Positions 3,726 to 57,817 of a stretch of 64,000 nt of DNA are shown piece after piece. A program made the translations under genes and the position numbers. The stretch lies in the IMG/VR virus record IMGVR_UViG_3300042922_001182, positions 124,001-188,000 of that record; one strand, written 5' to 3'. Under the pieces are notes generated by a model, which worked only from the letters and a program-made list of their open reading frames with translations, was not told where the DNA came from and did no database searches. Position 1 is the stretch's first letter. Every line of letters starts with the position of its first letter.

Positions 3726-3802
3726 AGGCGGACGCCAAACAGGTAACTCTCCGAGCTTCGGAGACACGTCTTACAAAAATCGAAACTATTGGCTAAGCGG
3801 AC

Positions 3803-3811
3803 AAATATTAT
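3803..3811 (+). promoter_or_regulatory. early-type promoter motif AAATATTAT
   Basis: Variant of the recurring ATATTAT motif, upstream of a small plus-strand cassette. Confidence 0.6.
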
Positions 3812-3844
3812 TTTGGTGAGCAGATGAAGAAAGGACCTATCATC

Positions 3845-14776: not shown

Positions 14777-15574
14777 CTAGCCTTCCGAGTCGAACAGGTT
14801 GTCGATCTCGCCCTCGGCGACCTTGGTCACGGGGGACTTGCCGCCGACGGCGGGGGCGCCGGGCAGCTCGCGGCGGCGGCGGCGCTGACCGCCACCCTGG
14901 ACGGACTCCGTGGCCTCGCGGCGGGGCTGGTTGCCGCCAGCGGGAGCGGGACCGGCGGACAGCAGGTGCTCCTTGTTGCAGACGCGCTCAGCCGCCTGGA
15001 GGAAGCTCTCCAGGGTGTCCAGCTCGTGGTTGAACTTGTGGGTGTGGTCCGAGTGGCCGTCGTCGTCGGGGTTGAGGGTGATGACGCGGTGCAGCGCCTC
15101 CTCGGGAAGGATGTAGATGTTGTCGGCCTTGATCTTGCCGTCGGCGTCGTACTCCTTGAGGGCCAGGTACCACAGGCCGATCTCGTTCGGGGCGAGCTCG
15201 GTCTCGTCATCGATCGCCATGTCGTTGCCGATGATGAGGACCTTCTTGCCGTTGCGGCCGGGGTGGGCGATGGCGAACGACTGCACGCCGCTGGTCTCGG
15301 GGTCCTTGATCCAGGTGAGGCCCTGCTGGATGCCCTTCACGTCGCCGAGGTCGACCTGGAAGAAGACCTTCGCGTCGTGGTTGTACATCTGGAGGCCCTT
15401 CTGGGGCTCCTTGCCAGCGTGCTCCTTGAAGACCGGCGACAGGCTGAAGAAGGCCTTGTCCTGCCAGAAGCCCAGCTCCAGGGCGCCGTAGTTGTTGTTG
15501 TAGAGGATATGGGCTCGGACAGACGTGCCCTTCTGCTGGGTGTCCTGGCCGCCGTTGGCGTTCTGCTCGGTCAT
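14777..15574 (-). CDS. putative single-stranded DNA-binding protein
   Basis: Beta-rich aromatic N-domain, G/P-rich linker, acidic tail EGEIDNLFDSEG, next to DNA polymerase; function inferred. Confidence 0.5.
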   Translation of the reverse strand: MTEQNANGGQDTQQKGTSVRAHILYNNNYGALELGFWQDKAFFSLSPVFKEHAGKEPQKGLQMYNHDAKVFFQVDLGDVKGIQQGLTWIKDPETSGVQSFAIAHPGRNGKKVLIIGNDMAIDDETELAPNEIGLWYLALKEYDADGKIKADNIYILPEEALHRVITLNPDDDGHSDHTHKFNHELDTLESFLQAAERVCNKEHLLSAGPAPAGGNQPRREATESVQGGGQRRRRRELPGAPAVGGKSPVTKVAEGEIDNLFDSEG

Positions 15575-15611
15575 TTCCGGGGTGTCCTTTCTCTCGTTGG
15601 GGGAATTGCGG

Positions 15612-15623
15612 TATCGACTTGTT
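15612..15623 (-). promoter_or_regulatory. AACA-N6-TA promoter
   Basis: Minus strand AACA AGTCGA TA upstream of 15574. Confidence 0.7.
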
Positions 15624-15668
15624 GGGGCCCCCCTAACCGGATAAGCTAGGGGGGAACCCGAGACGCTC

Positions 15669-16432
15669 CTAGAACGTCACGATGTTGCTGTACTGGGAAC
15701 CAGCCGGTGTCTTGATCACCTTGAGGTCCATGCTCTCAAGAACGATGAAGCCGTTCCTGACGTTGTCGGAGGCGATGGTGTCCATGTCGATGAACTGGAT
15801 CAGCCACTCCGGGATGCGGTCGACCGACTTGGGGATGGCCAGGATGGTGAACCCGAACCGCTCCATCTTGGGGCTCTTGAAGACCGCCCTGTGGATGGCC
15901 TCGTACTGCGGGGTGCCGAAGATGGGGGCGAGGTCGCCGATCTTCTCCGCCTTCATCTTGAACAGGAGCACGTCCTCCGGGGCCGACAAGACCGGGAGTC
16001 TCTCCTCCGGGGGCAGCGCCTCCTGGAGGGCGTTCCACACGATGGAGCCGCGCACGGGGGCCTGGGTGTACGGGGCCTTGTACGCGCCGGAGCCGTCGAT
16101 GTACTCGTCGTTCGCGTCGCGGTCGCCGGGGTCGTTGAGGCGACCGGGCACGCCGAAGGTCACCTCGCCACGGGCCAGGCTCTCCTTCACGGACTTCTCG
16201 AACTCGCGGAACTTGCCCAGGACCCCGGACGTGCTCATGTCATCCGAGCCGAGGACGTCGTCCTTGATCAGCTTGGTGAAGAACTGGCGGGTGGTCTTGT
16301 TGACCGTGGTCTTCTTGATCGACAGGCCCTTGATGTCCAGCTTGGGCGGATCGATGATCGTGCCCTCCTGGGCCTTCAGGAGCCCGGCGTACTGCTTCTT
16401 GTTGTTGGTGGTCATCAACCTTGTGTAGAGGA
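15669..16432 (-). CDS. polB: family-B DNA polymerase, exon 2
   Basis: After splicing reads (F)LYTRLMTTNNKKQYAG...LDIKGLSIKK, the PolB KKxY and KG motifs; no RBS of its own. Confidence 0.9.
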
Positions 16433-16624
16433 CTCGGTGTTCACCCGGGGTCGCAGGTCCCGGATCGCCCCTAGGGGCAGCTGCGCGTCTCCGCGCAGGA
16501 CAGACTATATCATCACCCGCTTGGGGTGCCTCCCGTTTGGGGTACCATTGGCTTGTACCCTACGTGCATAAAGCACTAGTCGTTGAACCTTCCCGAAAAA
16601 AGTGAAACTACCCGTCCGTCGACC

Positions 16625-16633
16625 ACATATTCT
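16625..16633 (+). promoter_or_regulatory. early-type promoter motif ACATATTCT inside intron loop L6
   Basis: CGACC-ACATATTCT, one mismatch to the ACATATTAT motif seen at 32846 and 50816. Confidence 0.6.
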
Positions 16634-16710
16634 TTACATGAGCAAGATAGGATTTAGGGTCCGTACTATCATGCCTACGTCAGCACAGGATCCCTTTAGG
16701 AGGAATAACA

Positions 16711-16896
16711 ATGCTCAGCTCTTTGTTCAACGGTATCGGTGGCGCTGTGGAGTCCATCGGCAACGGCGTGTTCGGCGCGGTAGACGAGATCTTGGACGGC
16801 ACCTGGAAGGCCGGTGAGAGCATCGTCAAGGGCGTCGGCGGTGCGGCCGATGGGGCCTGCAAGGCGGTCGACTCGCTGTTCGGCGACATCGACTAG
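16711..16896 (+). CDS. 61-aa amphipathic 11-mer-repeat peptide, antisense within the group I intron
   Basis: Strong RBS AGGAGG, C/G-ending codons like other genes, flanked by promoter motif and terminator. Confidence 0.8.
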   Translation: MLSSLFNGIGGAVESIGNGVFGAVDEILDGTWKAGESIVKGVGGAADGACKAVDSLFGDID

Positions 16897-16902
16897 TCCA
16901 TA

Positions 16903-16936
16903 GGAGGCGGGGGTAACACCCCGCCTCTCTTTTTTT
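16903..16936 (+). terminator. intrinsic terminator of the intron-nested gene
   Basis: GAGGCGGGG-loop-CCCCGCCTC followed by TCTTTTTTT. Confidence 0.85.
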
Positions 16937-17033
16937 CGGGCTTGGCTGCTGATTACCCGCTTCGGGCTTCCCAGCAATTAGAGAGGTTTGCATACGGGCG
17001 TTGCCACCCGTAGGAGCTAGGCCACGCGGGCCA

Positions 17034-18252
17034 ACTCGTTCTTCATGTTGATGATGGGGCGCTTGTCCTCGGGGATGTTCATGTTCCTGGTCAGGGTGGC
17101 GTAGGTGCTCTCGATGACCCTGGCGAGCAGGTAGATGACGACGTTGACGACGCTCACGCGGTCGACGTCCTCCTTCGTCTTGGCCCCCAGCTCGTCGCGG
17201 CAGAACCGGACGAAGGGGTCGACGTTGATGAAGTTGGAGTCCGTGTCCACCACCAGGACGGCGGCCCTGGGGTCCTGCTCGGCCCGCTGGAAGTGGTCCT
17301 CCGGGATGTGGTCGTGGTACACGAAGTGTGCCAGGTAGCCCCAGAGCTCCTTGAGGTAGGGCAGGACGTCCTCCGCCGGGTGGTCGGCGTTCGTGACCTT
17401 GAGGTCGCTGGCGAACAGGGATTCAAGCACCTTCCTGGCGTTGGCGCACCGGCGCAGGAACTCGTAGAGGTTGTTGCGGAAGAAGACTCGCGCCACCTCG
17501 TAGGGGTCCAGGGAGGACACGGCCTTGAGCAGGATCGCCCGCGCCTCGTCGGAGGGGTGCTTGCGGAACCTGGACAGCAGGTGGCCCATGAGCTCGTCGT
17601 GGGTCGGGGGATTGTCGAGGACCCACACCCTGTCCGCGCTGCGCTGGGACTCCTCCGGCATGCAACGCTCGACGAACAGCAGCGCCTCCGACAGGTCGTT
17701 GAACGGGCAGTTACCGGCGAGGAACTGCTCGAAGGCCATGACCGACGCGGTGATGATCGTGCGACCCGTGTACGTGACGCTGGGGCCGACTCGCGGGTTG
17801 AAGAAGATGCAGTTCTTCTCGCCCGACGCGCCGTAGTAGGAGTTGGCCAGGAGCTTGATCGTCTTCTGGTCGCGGTCGTAGTTGTCGTGGAGGGTGCGGT
17901 CCACGTCGTTGACGTGGGCCAGCATCTTCTTCTTCGCCACCTTGCGGCTCTTCATGAGCCACTCCAGCATGGCCGCGATCAGGTTGATCGAGTTGGAGTG
18001 CTGCTTGTAGGCGGTCCCGTAGGGCGTGAACACCGGCTGGTGCTTGCCCAAGAGGAAGTCCGAGAACTGCAGGACGTCGATCTGCTTGTCCGCCCCGGTC
18101 GTGTCGTTGTTGAAGGAGCACCCCGGCTTCCTCACCCTCTCGTCGACGATCGCGTCGACCTTGGCCCGGATGGCCTCGGGGTCCCTGTCGGGGAACTGGC
18201 GGACCAGGACCTCCATGACCTCTGCCTTGTAGGCCTCAAGAGTTGCTGACAT
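17034..18252 (-). CDS. polB: family-B DNA polymerase, exon 1 (spliced product 660 aa)
   Basis: Motif B QKTIKLLANSYYG, SVTYTGR, motif C VVDTDS, ends IINMKNE at the splice site; RBS GGGAGG. Confidence 0.92.
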
Positions 18253-18281
18253 GTTTAGTTTCCTCCCGTCTCTGTGGGTGA

Positions 18282-18293
18282 TACCGGGGTGTT
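18282..18293 (-). promoter_or_regulatory. AACA-N6-TA promoter for DNA polymerase
   Basis: Minus strand AACA CCCCGG TA, 30 nt upstream of the ATG. Confidence 0.7.
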
Positions 18294-18311
18294 CCGGGCG
18301 GCCCTATTGGC

Positions 18312-19184
18312 CTAGAAGTAGAACCGTTGTCCGCCGACGCCGAAGCTGTGGAAGCCGTGGACCTTCGCCACCGCTTGCCTAACGTCGTTCTCGTCCTTGG
18401 TGATGTACGTACCGCAGTCGTACCGCAGGCTGTCGGGGATACCGTCTCCGTAGTGGACCAGCACCGTCTTCGCCCGGACCCACATCGAGAGCTCCCGATG
18501 GAGCTGCCAGAAGTTGGTATGGACGTCGCTCTTACCGGCGTTCGGGCCGACGAACATCTGGCAGTCGTGGAAGACCATGTCCAGGTCCTTGCCAAGGGTG
18601 CGGTACGGGTACTGCTCAAGGAGCATCGGGTGGATCTCCTTGCAGTCGCTGGTCCAGAGCACCCGCTGGTCGATGAGCAGGCCCCAGCTGTCGTGGCCGT
18701 GGACGTGCTTCATCTTCACGGGTTTCAGGTGGATGTTCTCGAACGTCATGGTCGTCTTTTCGTTGAAAAGCGCCACGTCGAAGTAGGTGCTGATGTCCGC
18801 CTTAACGTGATTGTCCTCCTCGTCCTGTATGTCGAGCATGCCTCCAGAGAGGACGCCGCTCCACAGGGTTCCGACCTGGTCCTCCGAGACGAAGAGCCTC
18901 AGCTTGCGGCCCTTGACGAAGTAGTAGTAGAACCCCAGCGTCTCCAGGCCACCGGCGTGGTCGTCGTGGAGGTGGGTGATGTAGACCGCATCGATCTTGT
19001 CCACGGAGCCGTTCTCCATGATCCGACGAACGGTGTCTGGGCTAGCGTCGATGAGCAGGTTGTATTCTTTCCCGTGGTCCCAGTTCTTCCAGGTGAGCAG
19101 GGCGTTGGTGTTTCCGAGTCCGGTCCTCGACATGGCGGAACCCACCCCGATGAGGGTCAGGCAAAACTTCTTCTTGTTGGACAC
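18312..19184 (-). CDS. metallo-beta-lactamase-fold hydrolase (RNase Z/phosphodiesterase-like)
   Basis: LIGVGSA, LLID, ITHLHDDHAGG (HxHxDH), WTSD, VH and VHY motifs. Confidence 0.88.
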   Translation of the reverse strand: MSNKKKFCLTLIGVGSAMSRTGLGNTNALLTWKNWDHGKEYNLLIDASPDTVRRIMENGSVDKIDAVYITHLHDDHAGGLETLGFYYYFVKGRKLRLFVSEDQVGTLWSGVLSGGMLDIQDEEDNHVKADISTYFDVALFNEKTTMTFENIHLKPVKMKHVHGHDSWGLLIDQRVLWTSDCKEIHPMLLEQYPYRTLGKDLDMVFHDCQMFVGPNAGKSDVHTNFWQLHRELSMWVRAKTVLVHYGDGIPDSLRYDCGTYITKDENDVRQAVAKVHGFHSFGVGGQRFYF

Positions 19185-19200: not shown

Positions 19201-19872
19201 CTAGCTGCTAAGCCCGCCGTGCAGCCGCACGGCCATCTGCTCGTCGATCTCCGCGACGACGGACTGGAGTAGGACGGACTTGTTGTACACCCAGCTCTCC
19301 CGGACGAAGCGGAGGGCCTCCCACGGCAGGCCCCTGGCCGCCTCGTTGCCGGAGGACCACTCCTGGTGGCACCACAGGGCGAACTCCAGGCGGTCGGCCA
19401 CCTTCACGATGTCCGCGATGGCGTCGGTCTTGTGCTCCGACGAGAAGGTCCACACCTGACGGATGAGCTTCTCGATGCGGTCCCTGACCTCCACGGGGAC
19501 GAACCTGCGGAAGCCGTCCCGGATCAGGCTGGCGACGTAGCCCTCGTGGGCCCTGTCGGCTGCCCCGGCGATGGCCTTCTTCAGGTTCTCGTCGCCGTTC
19601 TTGAAGGGGCCGCTGACGTCCCCCGTGATGGCCTCGTCGTAATCGTGGAGGATGGCCGCCCTGAGCACCTTGCCGGAGTCCACGTCGTTGATGTCCATGT
19701 CCTCGACGAGCATCATGCAGATGAACGCCACCTGGAACGAGTGGGCGGAGACCGATTGCGGTTGGTTGACCCGCAGCCCCGGGGCCCGCCAGGTGTAGTC
19801 CAGCTTGCGGGCGAGCTCGAATGCCTTGATCATTGATGAATCTCCTCGGGCCATCTCCAGGCCCCCTTGCAT
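19201..19872 (-). CDS. HD-domain 5'-deoxynucleotidase (YfbR-like); exact start uncertain
   Basis: QSVSAHSFQVA, ILHDYDEAITGD, IVKVADRLE motifs. Confidence 0.85.
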   Translation of the reverse strand: MQGGLEMARGDSSMIKAFELARKLDYTWRAPGLRVNQPQSVSAHSFQVAFICMMLVEDMDINDVDSGKVLRAAILHDYDEAITGDVSGPFKNGDENLKKAIAGAADRAHEGYVASLIRDGFRRFVPVEVRDRIEKLIRQVWTFSSEHKTDAIADIVKVADRLEFALWCHQEWSSGNEAARGLPWEALRFVRESWVYNKSVLLQSVVAEIDEQMAVRLHGGLSS

Positions 19873-20382: not shown

Positions 20383-20531
20383 CCTGCTGAGCTCTGTGGC
20401 CCGTTTAGCGGCGGCGGCCACGCCGAGAGCTACCTCCACACCCCGAAACACTCCGGAAGCCCCCAACCCATTCACGGGTTGGGGGCTTCCGCCCTTCGTT
20501 TTCTCCCGAAGGCGGGCGGGCAACTACGTTC

Positions 20532-20540
20532 ATATATTAT
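20532..20540 (+). promoter_or_regulatory. early-type promoter motif ATATATTAT
   Basis: Upstream of the operon containing beta'-C and the helicase. Confidence 0.7.
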
Positions 20541-20592
20541 CTCCTGCGCGACCTCACGGTCAGCACCCCCCAACTACTAGAGAGGAAGCAGA

Positions 20593-57457: not shown

Positions 57458-57764
57458 GGCGGGGGCATTTCCAGGTTATGCGGAGGCGTGCCTCGCTCGC
57501 GGTTAATGATTCCGTATGTCAGAGTAAGTTCTAGGATACATAGTTGCAAATGAAAGAGAGAAAGGAGTACAACAACTCCTTTCTTCTTATTTAAACACGA
57601 AGTTACCTAGAGGTCCCCTAGAGAACCTGGAAAAGGTCATCAAAGGATAGTTTTGACCGGTAATTAACTTTTTAGGGAAGACCTTAAAGGTCTAAACGGT
57701 ATGTATCTGTAAATCGCGCGAAATCCCACCCAGGGAATAAAGCGAATCTAAGCCATTTCCGACC

Positions 57765-57773
57765 GTATATTAT
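57765..57773 (+). promoter_or_regulatory. early-type promoter motif GTATATTAT
   Basis: CGACC-GTATATTAT, 45 nt upstream of 57818. Confidence 0.7.
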
Positions 57774-57817
57774 TGTTGTGACGTGATTGGATACTTAGCT
57801 ATAGGAGGTTATTAATC

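What the first reader, a model, noticed from the sequence alone, without database searches (positions are those of the whole stretch)
16591..16940. Terminator T-tract of the nested gene doubles as one arm of intron helix P6a: possible antisense control of polymerase splicing
Seen: plus-strand 16930-16940 (TTTTTTTCGGG) is both the terminator tail and the complement of the P6a 5' arm; its partner CCCGAAAAAA lies at 16592-16601. The hairpin has no U-tract in the minus direction, so it should not stop the polB transcript. The nested gene has an early-type motif while polB has an AACA-N6-TA promoter. Inference: the antisense RNA could pair with L6 and invade P6a, or cause polymerase collisions, and so time the production of spliced polB mRNA.
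Basis: inference. Interest (0 to 1): 0.7.

Follow-up and report, generated by a model that had tools for sequence, protein, structure and literature searches.

The report
Backwards early gene inside polymerase intron
A giant soil phage's DNA polymerase gene is split by a self-splicing intron, and one intron loop carries a small, independently controlled gene on the opposite strand whose promoter and terminator edges also form an intron helix; whether this controls splicing remains untested.

Summary

- **Intron:** a 601-nt group I intron (minus strand, 17033-16433) splits a divergent family-B DNA polymerase gene in a 239-kb AR9-like jumbo phage from soil.
- **Cassette:** its L6a loop holds a 328-nt insert on the plus strand. 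The insert carries an AR9-type early promoter (TSS about 16640), an AGGAGG ribosome-binding site, a 61-codon ORF and a hairpin plus T7 terminator.
- **P6a:** this helix is conserved by covariation in 54 related introns. Here it is CCCG/CGGG plus six A-U pairs.
- **polB promoter:** polB has an AR9-type late motif (AACA-N6-TA), and the terminator does not read as one on the intron strand.

The regulatory inference stays untested. No RNA run was listed and no relative carries the cassette. The promoter deviates at a position invariant in 25 other sites. The predicted 297-nt early RNA would cover only the A-tract of one P6a arm. Control could equally run the other way.

My reading: a typical early-gene module lodged antisense in a tolerant intron loop and clamped off by P6a. 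New variant of a known kind; moderate interest.

The parts
17034..18252 (-). polB exon 1 (divergent family-B DNA polymerase, PF20286/PF00136); ends ...INMKNE + U
   Evidence: Pfam hits. Alignment to uninterrupted homologues. The last exon base, 17034, is U and pairs G.U in P1.
16433..17033 (-). Group I intron, 601 nt, IA2-like core, ends in G
   Evidence: Rfam RF00028 at 57.3 bits against a cut-off of 50 over 17043-16481. Boundaries come from the homologue alignment, which restores NEFLYTRLM. Fold.
15669..16432 (-). polB exon 2
   Evidence: PF20286 hit. Alignment.
16931..16940 (-). P6a 5' arm (RNA CCCGAAAAAA); its A-tract is the complement of the nested gene's terminator T-tract
16592..16601 (-). 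P6a 3' arm (RNA UUUUUUCGGG); on the plus strand its A-run overlaps the A-rich distal edge of the nested promoter
16603..16610 (+). Upstream promoter element TGAAACTA (family consensus CGAATCTA), 13 nt before the core
   Evidence: Seven other sites share this element at the same N13 spacing from a core motif. A PWM built from them scores this site 32.2 bits, against 8.5 for the next non-member.
16624..16633 (+). Early-type promoter core CACATATTCT (family CACATATTAT); predicted start G at 16640
   Evidence: Motif counts: 10 exact and 15 one-mismatch sites on the plus strand, against 1 and 0 on the minus strand; expected 0.03 and 1.2 per strand. Of the 25 other sites, 23 have G after N6. Matches the AR9 early consensus ...ATATTAT-N6-G.
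16698..16703 (+). Ribosome-binding site AGGAGG, 7 nt before the ATG
   Evidence: Sequence.
16711..16896 (+). Nested ORF, 61 aa, acidic, Gly-rich, 11-residue amphipathic repeat; no relatives found
   Evidence: Translation. GC3 0.87 against a genome mean of 0.89 +/- 0.095. AF2 predicts one long helix, pLDDT 82. No true homologues.
16903..16936 (+). Intrinsic terminator: 10-bp hairpin (8 G-C pairs) 16903-16928 plus T7 16930-16936
   Evidence: Similar hairpin plus T-run ends follow other early modules.
18282..18293 (-). Late-type promoter motif AACA-N6-TA for polB; predicted start 30 nt before the ATG
   Evidence: 35 motifs lie in the 0-80-nt upstream zones against 7.5 expected. AR9 late consensus.

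Best explanation
A standard early-gene module of this phage sits in antisense orientation in the L6a loop of a self-splicing group I intron that splits the polB gene. The module consists of a virion-RNA-polymerase-type promoter, a leader of about 70 nt, a ribosome-binding site, a small ORF and an intrinsic terminator. The intron's conserved P6a stem (CCCG/CGGG, identical in relative L029, where it closes a GAAA loop) is lengthened by six A-U pairs. These pairs come from the module's own edges: the terminator T-tract on one side and the A-rich distal end of the promoter on the other. This clamp keeps the 328-nt insert folded on itself and away from the ribozyme core, so the late polB pre-mRNA can still splice. 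Because the gene reads the other strand, no ribosome and no terminator act on the intron RNA. Shown here: the anatomy, the motif-family membership, P6a conservation and the predicted insulation. Inferred: that the promoter fires early, that the ORF is translated and that the intron splices. Cross-talk between the two transcripts is a possible side effect, not a demonstrated function.
For: The intron is detected and the splice junction restores a conserved polymerase motif. The phage was abundant in its source sample, at a contig word depth of 623, which suggests a replicating phage and hence a working polB. P6a is conserved by covariation in 54 related introns, and L029 has the same CCCG/CGGG stem on a GAAA loop. 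Related introns have a P6 span of 16-48 nt, so the insert is an addition. In the folding ensemble the insert makes about 98 expected internal pairs and 0.00 pairs with the core, and P6a is in the MFE. The promoter is the best non-training PWM match in the genome, with the N13 spacing and +1 G conserved. Other members drive the same promoter, small ORF, terminator layout. The ORF has genome-typical GC3 and a strong ribosome-binding site. The phage has two RNA polymerase beta-like genes, one of them behind an exact early motif, which fits an AR9-like two-polymerase programme. In T4, the td intron's I-TevI ORF lies in the P6 loop, and the intron endonuclease genes have their own middle or late promoters.
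Against: There are no expression data of any kind. The promoter deviates in both elements, including a core position invariant in the 25 other sites. The ORF is an orphan, so selection on it cannot be measured. The codon log-odds score does not separate the ORF from its mirror frame. The insert's fold is no more stable than shuffles, z -0.4. Only one genome carries the arrangement.
Confidence: 0.6

Rival explanations
1. The early antisense RNA pairs with the L6a insert of the polB pre-mRNA (or the two polymerases collide), blocks P6a/P6 formation or triggers double-strand RNA cleavage, and so delays production of spliced polB mRNA until early transcription stops.
For: The two RNAs are fully complementary over 297 nt by construction. 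The early-type and late-type promoters converge. A full duplex of about 83 nm cannot coexist with P6a closure across a 38-nt linker, and a fold with that region blocked loses native P6a. Both of the last two points are inference.
Against: No RNA data were listed. The RNA does not reach the 3' arm of P6a and covers only the A-tract of the 5' arm. The promoter is a deviant member. polB already depends on a late-type promoter, so it is delayed without any antisense help. The arrangement is not conserved in any relative. From my memory, not checked here: the P6a-L6a region of T4 td tolerates deletion and even splitting.
Confidence: 0.12
2. Control runs the other way. Late convergent transcription of polB, and the excised intron RNA that is complementary to the whole early mRNA including its ribosome-binding site, shut the nested early gene off at late times.
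For: The excised 601-nt intron is highly structured, MFE -229.6 kcal/mol, and would contain the full antisense sequence. The nested gene is the only plus-strand gene in a minus-strand block of about 15 kb.
Against: There are no data. The stability of the excised intron is unknown, and early transcripts may have decayed before late transcription begins.
Confidence: 0.13
3. The cassette is a decaying or neutral passenger. It is an early module that landed in a tolerant loop, its promoter is eroding, and it now has no function beyond not harming splicing.
For: There are deviations in both promoter elements, including an otherwise invariant core base. The ORF is an orphan with only low-complexity look-alikes. 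No relative shares the cassette.
Against: The ORF is intact with GC3 0.87, and the ribosome-binding site and terminator are intact. The PWM score is far above background.
Confidence: 0.13
4. The real intron ORF is on the intron's own strand (93 codons, 16977-16699), as in ordinary intron-encoded proteins.
For: That frame is open and has a coding-like codon log-odds score of 0.367.
Against: Its only start is a TTG inside P3/P4, with no ribosome-binding site. GC3 is 0.60 against a genome mean of 0.89. There is no domain hit beyond E 0.03. Mirror frames of GC3-rich genes often score high; 6% of off-frame windows exceed the nested ORF's score.
Confidence: 0.02

Closest known systems
T4 td / nrdB / nrdD introns with I-TevI, I-TevIII and I-TevII (IA2 group I introns of phage)
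   Same: A phage group I intron in a DNA-metabolism gene. For the td intron, the ORF lies in the P6 loop and part of it overlaps P6a (PMC3073962). All three endonuclease genes have their own promoter of a different temporal class from the host gene, and sequences serve both the gene and the ribozyme (PMC2988022).
   Different: There the ORF is a homing endonuclease on the same strand, and its translation is held back by a hairpin that sequesters the ribosome-binding site. Here the ORF is a 61-aa non-endonuclease on the opposite strand with its own terminator.
Bacillus phage AR9 g190 inside the intron of g189
   Same: The nearest known phage lineage: polB 37% identical, with the same early and late promoter grammar. 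An early-promoter gene lies inside an intron of a late gene (PMC5312081).
   Different: g190 is an HNH homing endonuclease on the same strand as g189. AR9's own polB is uninterrupted and sits behind an early promoter.
Antisense homing endonuclease genes in nuclear rDNA group I introns (Didymium I-DirII; L2066 introns)
   Same: A protein gene in antisense orientation inside a group I intron, expressed from its own promoter (PMC3073962; PMC9548176).
   Different: Those are eukaryotic, Pol II-driven, His-Cys box endonucleases tied to intron mobility. They are not a phage early gene, and no helix arm is reported to double as a terminator or promoter edge.
Introns at the same polB site in relatives (L004, L127, L126, L128)
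   Same: The polymerase is broken at the same NMK(N/S)E position. L004 is a group I intron with a near-identical P3-P7 core.
   Different: L004 and L127 carry a same-strand ORF of about 264 aa (faint DUF723 hits) with a short P6. L126 has an ORF-less gap of about 330 nt. L128 holds an ORF-less group II intron.

Membership tests
Group I intron (Rfam RF00028) | Covariance-model score above the curated cut-off | tested here: met
   57.3 bits against 50, E 6.5e-12, model positions 1-253 (repeated).
Group I intron (Rfam RF00028) | U at the end of the 5' exon pairing G.U in P1; terminal G of the intron; splicing restores the host reading frame | tested here: met
   U at 17034 and G at 16433. The junction gives NEFLYTRLM, against the homologue consensus NEFLYSRLM.
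Group I intron (Rfam RF00028) | Self-splicing activity | not testable with these tools
   No RNA run was listed. Splicing is only inferred, because polB is presumably essential and the phage was abundant.
P6a helix of phage-type (IA2-like) introns | Helix directly after GCCAAG and before AAGGUUCAA, maintained by compensatory changes | tested here: met
   All 5 P6a pairs have both-sides changes, in 6-32 of 54 sequences. The window has CCCG/CGGG at that place, extended by 6 A-U pairs.
AR9-type early (virion RNA polymerase) promoter | Conserved AT-rich core ...ATATTAT followed by N6 and G(+1), upstream of a gene | tested here: inconclusive
   The core is CACATATTCT: one deviation, at a base invariant in 25 other sites. 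The G after N6 is present. The ORF starts 71 nt downstream of the predicted start site. The PWM scores 32.2 bits, against 48-60 for the training members and 8.5 for background. Activity was not tested.
AR9-type late (non-virion RNA polymerase) promoter on polB | AACA-N6-T(A/G) 20-50 nt before the start codon | tested here: met
   Motif at 18293-18282 (minus strand), 30 nt before the ATG. The motif is enriched 35 against 7.5 expected in upstream zones.
Intrinsic terminator | G+C-rich hairpin followed by a T-run on the transcribed strand only | tested here: met
   Plus-strand site at 16903-16928 plus T7. No minus-strand site in 15500-18400.
Intron-encoded homing endonuclease gene | Recognisable endonuclease domain (GIY-YIG, HNH, LAGLIDADG, His-Cys, PD-(D/E)xK) | tested here: not met
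   No Pfam hit even at E 10. The only PHROG match is a marginal one to a tape-measure repeat. At 61 aa and predicted as one helix, it is too small.
cis-antisense RNA regulator | Both RNAs present at the same time, with a measurable effect on the target | not testable with these tools
   Only the complementarity and the convergent promoters are shown. No RNA run was listed.

The most novel reading that the evidence does not exclude
The nested early mRNA and the polB intron form a mutually exclusive sense/antisense switch. While early transcription runs, duplex formation across L6a prevents P6a/P6 closure (or invites double-strand RNA cleavage), so no polymerase mRNA matures. Once late transcription dominates, the intron RNA silences the early gene. 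This would be a natural trans-acting antisense control of group I self-splicing that times DNA replication in a jumbo phage.
Probability: 0.1. Interest if true: 0.8.

Novelty: new variant of a known kind. Interest (0 to 1): 0.45.

Why it matters
Intron loops are known to host homing endonuclease genes on the intron's own strand. A non-endonuclease phage early gene on the opposite strand, with its own promoter and terminator, would show that intron loops can serve as general landing pads for phage genes. It would also show that one stretch of DNA can be shaped by three demands at once: promoter, terminator and ribozyme helix. I found no such case in phage or bacterial introns in a limited literature search. 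The locus is a compact natural test bed for whether antisense RNA can gate self-splicing. It also extends the AR9-type early and late promoter grammar to a distant, high-GC soil phage.

Tried and rejected
- **Near-identical phage DNA:** none found.
- **Relatives of the nested protein:** none in its own genome, the 5.8-billion word search, metagenome contigs or viral contigs. The exhaustive HMMER search gave only low-complexity amphipathic repeats in unrelated proteins. The Atlas look-alikes (phasin, CsmB, synuclein, Rv1893) scored 0.80 or less and are leads only.
- **Closer polB relatives:** the best is 42-45% identical, so there is no comparative test of the cassette.
- **RNA evidence:** no RNA run was listed. 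The single DNA run is probably the source sample and shows no variant or cassette-less form.
- **Same-strand intron ORF or endonuclease remnant:** rejected.
- **Codon log-odds score as proof of coding strand:** not discriminating, because the mirror frame scores alike. GC3, the ribosome-binding site and the start codon decide instead.
- **DNA tandem repeat under the 11-residue protein repeat:** none.
- **Long P6 inserts in related introns:** six of my seven candidates were regex artefacts or neighbouring introns. Only L056 is real (586 nt), and it has no convincing ORF.
- **Selected structure in the insert:** z-scores of -0.4 and -1.0, so none.
- **Sigma-70-type promoter:** none in the region.
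- **My crude gene call at genome 196071-197072 (minus strand):** wrong. That locus is an ordinary plus-strand early module.

Full report
**Context**

The window is bases 124001-188000 of a 238,984-bp virus record with direct terminal repeats and 63.5% G+C. It is held at high depth by one soil-metagenome run, which is probably its source. The minus-strand ORFs at 17017-18252 and 15669-16418 match the divergent family-B DNA polymerase of phiKZ/AR9-type jumbo phages, PF20286 and PF00136. The nearest named relatives are Bacillus phages PBS1 and AR9 at 37% identity. The nearest metagenomic polB is 42-45% identical. This is therefore a lone, distant, high-GC member of the AR9-like group. It has two RNA polymerase beta-like genes, one of them directly behind an exact copy of the early motif described below. 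That fits the two-polymerase programme described for AR9 (PMC5312081).

**The intron**

Rfam finds one group I intron in the whole genome, on the minus strand at 17043-16481, with a 344-nt insertion in P6 (57.3 bits against a cut-off of 50). I placed the splice sites by aligning both ORFs to uninterrupted homologues. Exon 1 ends at U 17034 and the intron runs 17033-16433, ending in G. The junction reads NEFLYTRLM, against the homologue consensus NEFLYSRLM. The same NMK(N/S)E position is broken in at least six metagenomic homologues:

- L004 holds a group I intron with a near-identical P3-P7 core and a same-strand 264-aa ORF.
- L127 has a similar ORF.
- L126 has an ORF-less gap of about 330 nt.
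- L128 holds an ORF-less group II intron.

The site is therefore a recurrent intron target. None of these relatives has anything like the cassette found here.

**Checking the observation**

In the intron RNA they form a 10-bp helix, CCCGAAAAAA with UUUUUUCGGG. This helix appears in the minimum-energy fold of the 601-nt intron with pair probabilities of 0.66-1.0.

It is truly P6a. I pulled 118+ viral contigs that share this intron's P4-P5 core. In them the segment between GCCAAG and AAGGUUCAA is a short hairpin spanning 16-48 nt in nearly all cases. RNAalifold on 54 distinct examples predicts P6 plus a 5-pair P6a. Each of the five P6a pairs has compensatory double changes, in 6, 13, 25, 32 and 23 sequences respectively. 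One relative, L029, has exactly CCCG-GAAA-CGGG.

The window's helix is thus the ancestral 4-bp P6a plus six extra A-U pairs, and the 328 nt between them is an insertion into the L6a loop. In T4 td, the I-TevI ORF likewise lies in the P6 loop and overlaps P6a.

**The nested unit**

On the plus strand the insert reads as a complete transcription unit.

(a) *Promoter.* CACATATTAT occurs 10 times exactly and 15 times with one mismatch on the plus strand, against 1 and 0 on the minus strand. About 0.03 and 1.2 per strand are expected. The sites are almost all intergenic, mostly 25-200 nt before a same-strand gene, and 23 of the 25 other sites have G after N6. This matches the AR9 early consensus ...ATATTAT-N6-G(+1). 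Seven other sites share an upstream CGAATCTA element exactly 13 nt before the core, and they mostly drive small ORFs with their own terminators. The nested site belongs with these seven. It has TGAAACTA, N13, CACATATTCT, N6 and G at 16640. A PWM built from the seven others scores it 32.2 bits. That is the best non-training site on either strand, with the next at 8.5 bits, but it is well below the members' 48-60 bits. Its core deviates at a base invariant in all 25 other sites, and AR9's virion polymerase is reported to be intolerant of some single deviations. It is therefore a real family member of uncertain strength.

(b) *Translation signals and ORF.* AGGAGG lies 7 nt before an ATG. The 61-codon ORF has GC3 of 0.87, against a genome mean of 0.89 +/- 0.095.

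(c) *Terminator.* A 10-bp hairpin with 8 G-C pairs is followed by T7.

The predicted RNA is 297 nt (16640-16936).

The protein is acidic, about -6 net charge by my count. It is a clear 11-residue amphipathic repeat, predicted as one long helix (pLDDT 82, single sequence). It has no relatives beyond low-complexity look-alikes. Its function is unknown; lipid or surface binding is only a lead.

The other P6a arm is also dual-use. The plus-strand A-run at 16596-16601 is the A-rich stretch that precedes the upstream element in every promoter with that element. Both edges of the module, promoter distal end and terminator tail, supply the A-U extension of P6a.

**The host gene's signals**

AACA-N6-TA lies 30 nt before the polB ATG. 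AACA-N6-T(A/G) is enriched in the 0-80-nt zones upstream of genes, with 35 found against 7.5 expected and 11 for the opposite-strand control. This matches AR9's late consensus. No terminator-like site is found on the minus strand across the region. On the minus strand, the complement of the nested terminator is preceded by an A-run and is not followed by a U-run. The nested gene is the only plus-strand gene in a minus-strand block of about 15 kb.

**How it most likely works**

In the folding ensemble the insert pairs only with itself: about 98 expected internal pairs and 0.00 with the core. P6a therefore acts as a clamp that keeps a large passenger out of the ribozyme core. Antisense orientation removes the known conflict between translation of an intron ORF and splicing (the I-TevI case). 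It also means the module's terminator does not stop polB transcription. I therefore read the locus as an ordinary early module lodged in a tolerant loop, with the shared A/T tracts serving three roles at once.

**The regulatory idea**

The idea is possible but unsupported. In its favour, a full 297-bp duplex would be about 83 nm long while only 38 nt (about 22 nm) link its end to the 3' arm of P6a. Full pairing and P6a closure therefore exclude each other. A fold with that region blocked replaces native P6a with other pairings. Both points are inference.

Against it:

- The RNA does not reach the 3' arm and covers only the A-tract of the 5' arm.
- The promoter is a deviant.
- polB is already late by its own promoter.
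- Nothing is conserved in relatives.
- No RNA data were listed.

The reverse effect is equally plausible: late transcription or the excised intron may silence the early gene.

**Comparison with known systems**

The closest cases are:

- The T4 td, nrdB and nrdD introns, which have same-strand endonuclease genes with their own promoters.
- AR9 g190, an early-promoter HNH gene inside an intron of late g189, on the same strand.
- Antisense endonuclease genes in nuclear rDNA introns, which are eukaryotic and Pol II-driven.

I found no report of an opposite-strand, non-endonuclease gene with its own promoter and terminator in a phage or bacterial group I intron. The search was limited, so this is not proof of absence.

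**Verdict**

This is a new variant of a known kind, of moderate interest.

Noticed in passing
L128:2613-3153 (relative's polB locus): A relative's polB is cut at the same NMKNE position by an ORF-less group II intron (Rfam RF00029 at 67.9 bits, RF02004 at 46.8 bits). The same polymerase site is thus used by both intron classes.
   Followed up: partly
genome-wide; in the window at 3781-3817, 16603-16640, 57743-57780: Eight early-type promoters in all (seven plus the nested one) carry an extra upstream element (A-rich + CGAATCTA) exactly 13 nt before the CACATATTAT-like core. They tend to have weaker cores and to drive small ORFs with their own terminators. This may be a distinct early subclass.
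   Followed up: partly
window 18312-19184 (-): The gene just upstream of polB matches Pfam Anti-Pycsar Apyc1 (PF23023, E 6.7e-21, 75.3 bits) and metallo-beta-lactamase folds. It is a candidate cyclic-nucleotide-degrading counter-defence gene.
   Followed up: no
window 19201-19872 (-): This 223-aa ORF matches PHROG families named dATP triphosphohydrolase and deoxyribonucleoside 5'-monophosphate phosphatase. Beside polB, as in AR9 where a deoxyribonucleotidase follows polB, it hints at a non-standard DNA base.
   Followed up: no
polB homologues P0005, P0077, P0094, P0101, P0103: Besides NMK(N/S)E, the polymerase fragments end at two other recurrent places: after DTD (P0005) and after DIKG (P0077, P0094, P0101, P0103). 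The family appears to have several intron or intein hot spots.
   Followed up: no
L056:540-1126 (+): This is the only related intron among about 128 with a truly long P6 insertion (586 nt, closed by CUUGUGUGUAA/UUACACAUGGG), and it has no convincing ORF on either strand.
   Followed up: partly
window 20531-20547 and 73255-73271 (+): Two one-mismatch copies of the early core (CATATATTAT) lack the G after N6 that the other 23 sites have. They may be inactive or may start elsewhere.
   Followed up: no
window 16767-16778 (-): An AACA-N6-TG late-type motif lies on the intron strand inside the insert. About 0.4 such motifs are expected by chance in this span, so it is probably not meaningful.
   Followed up: no
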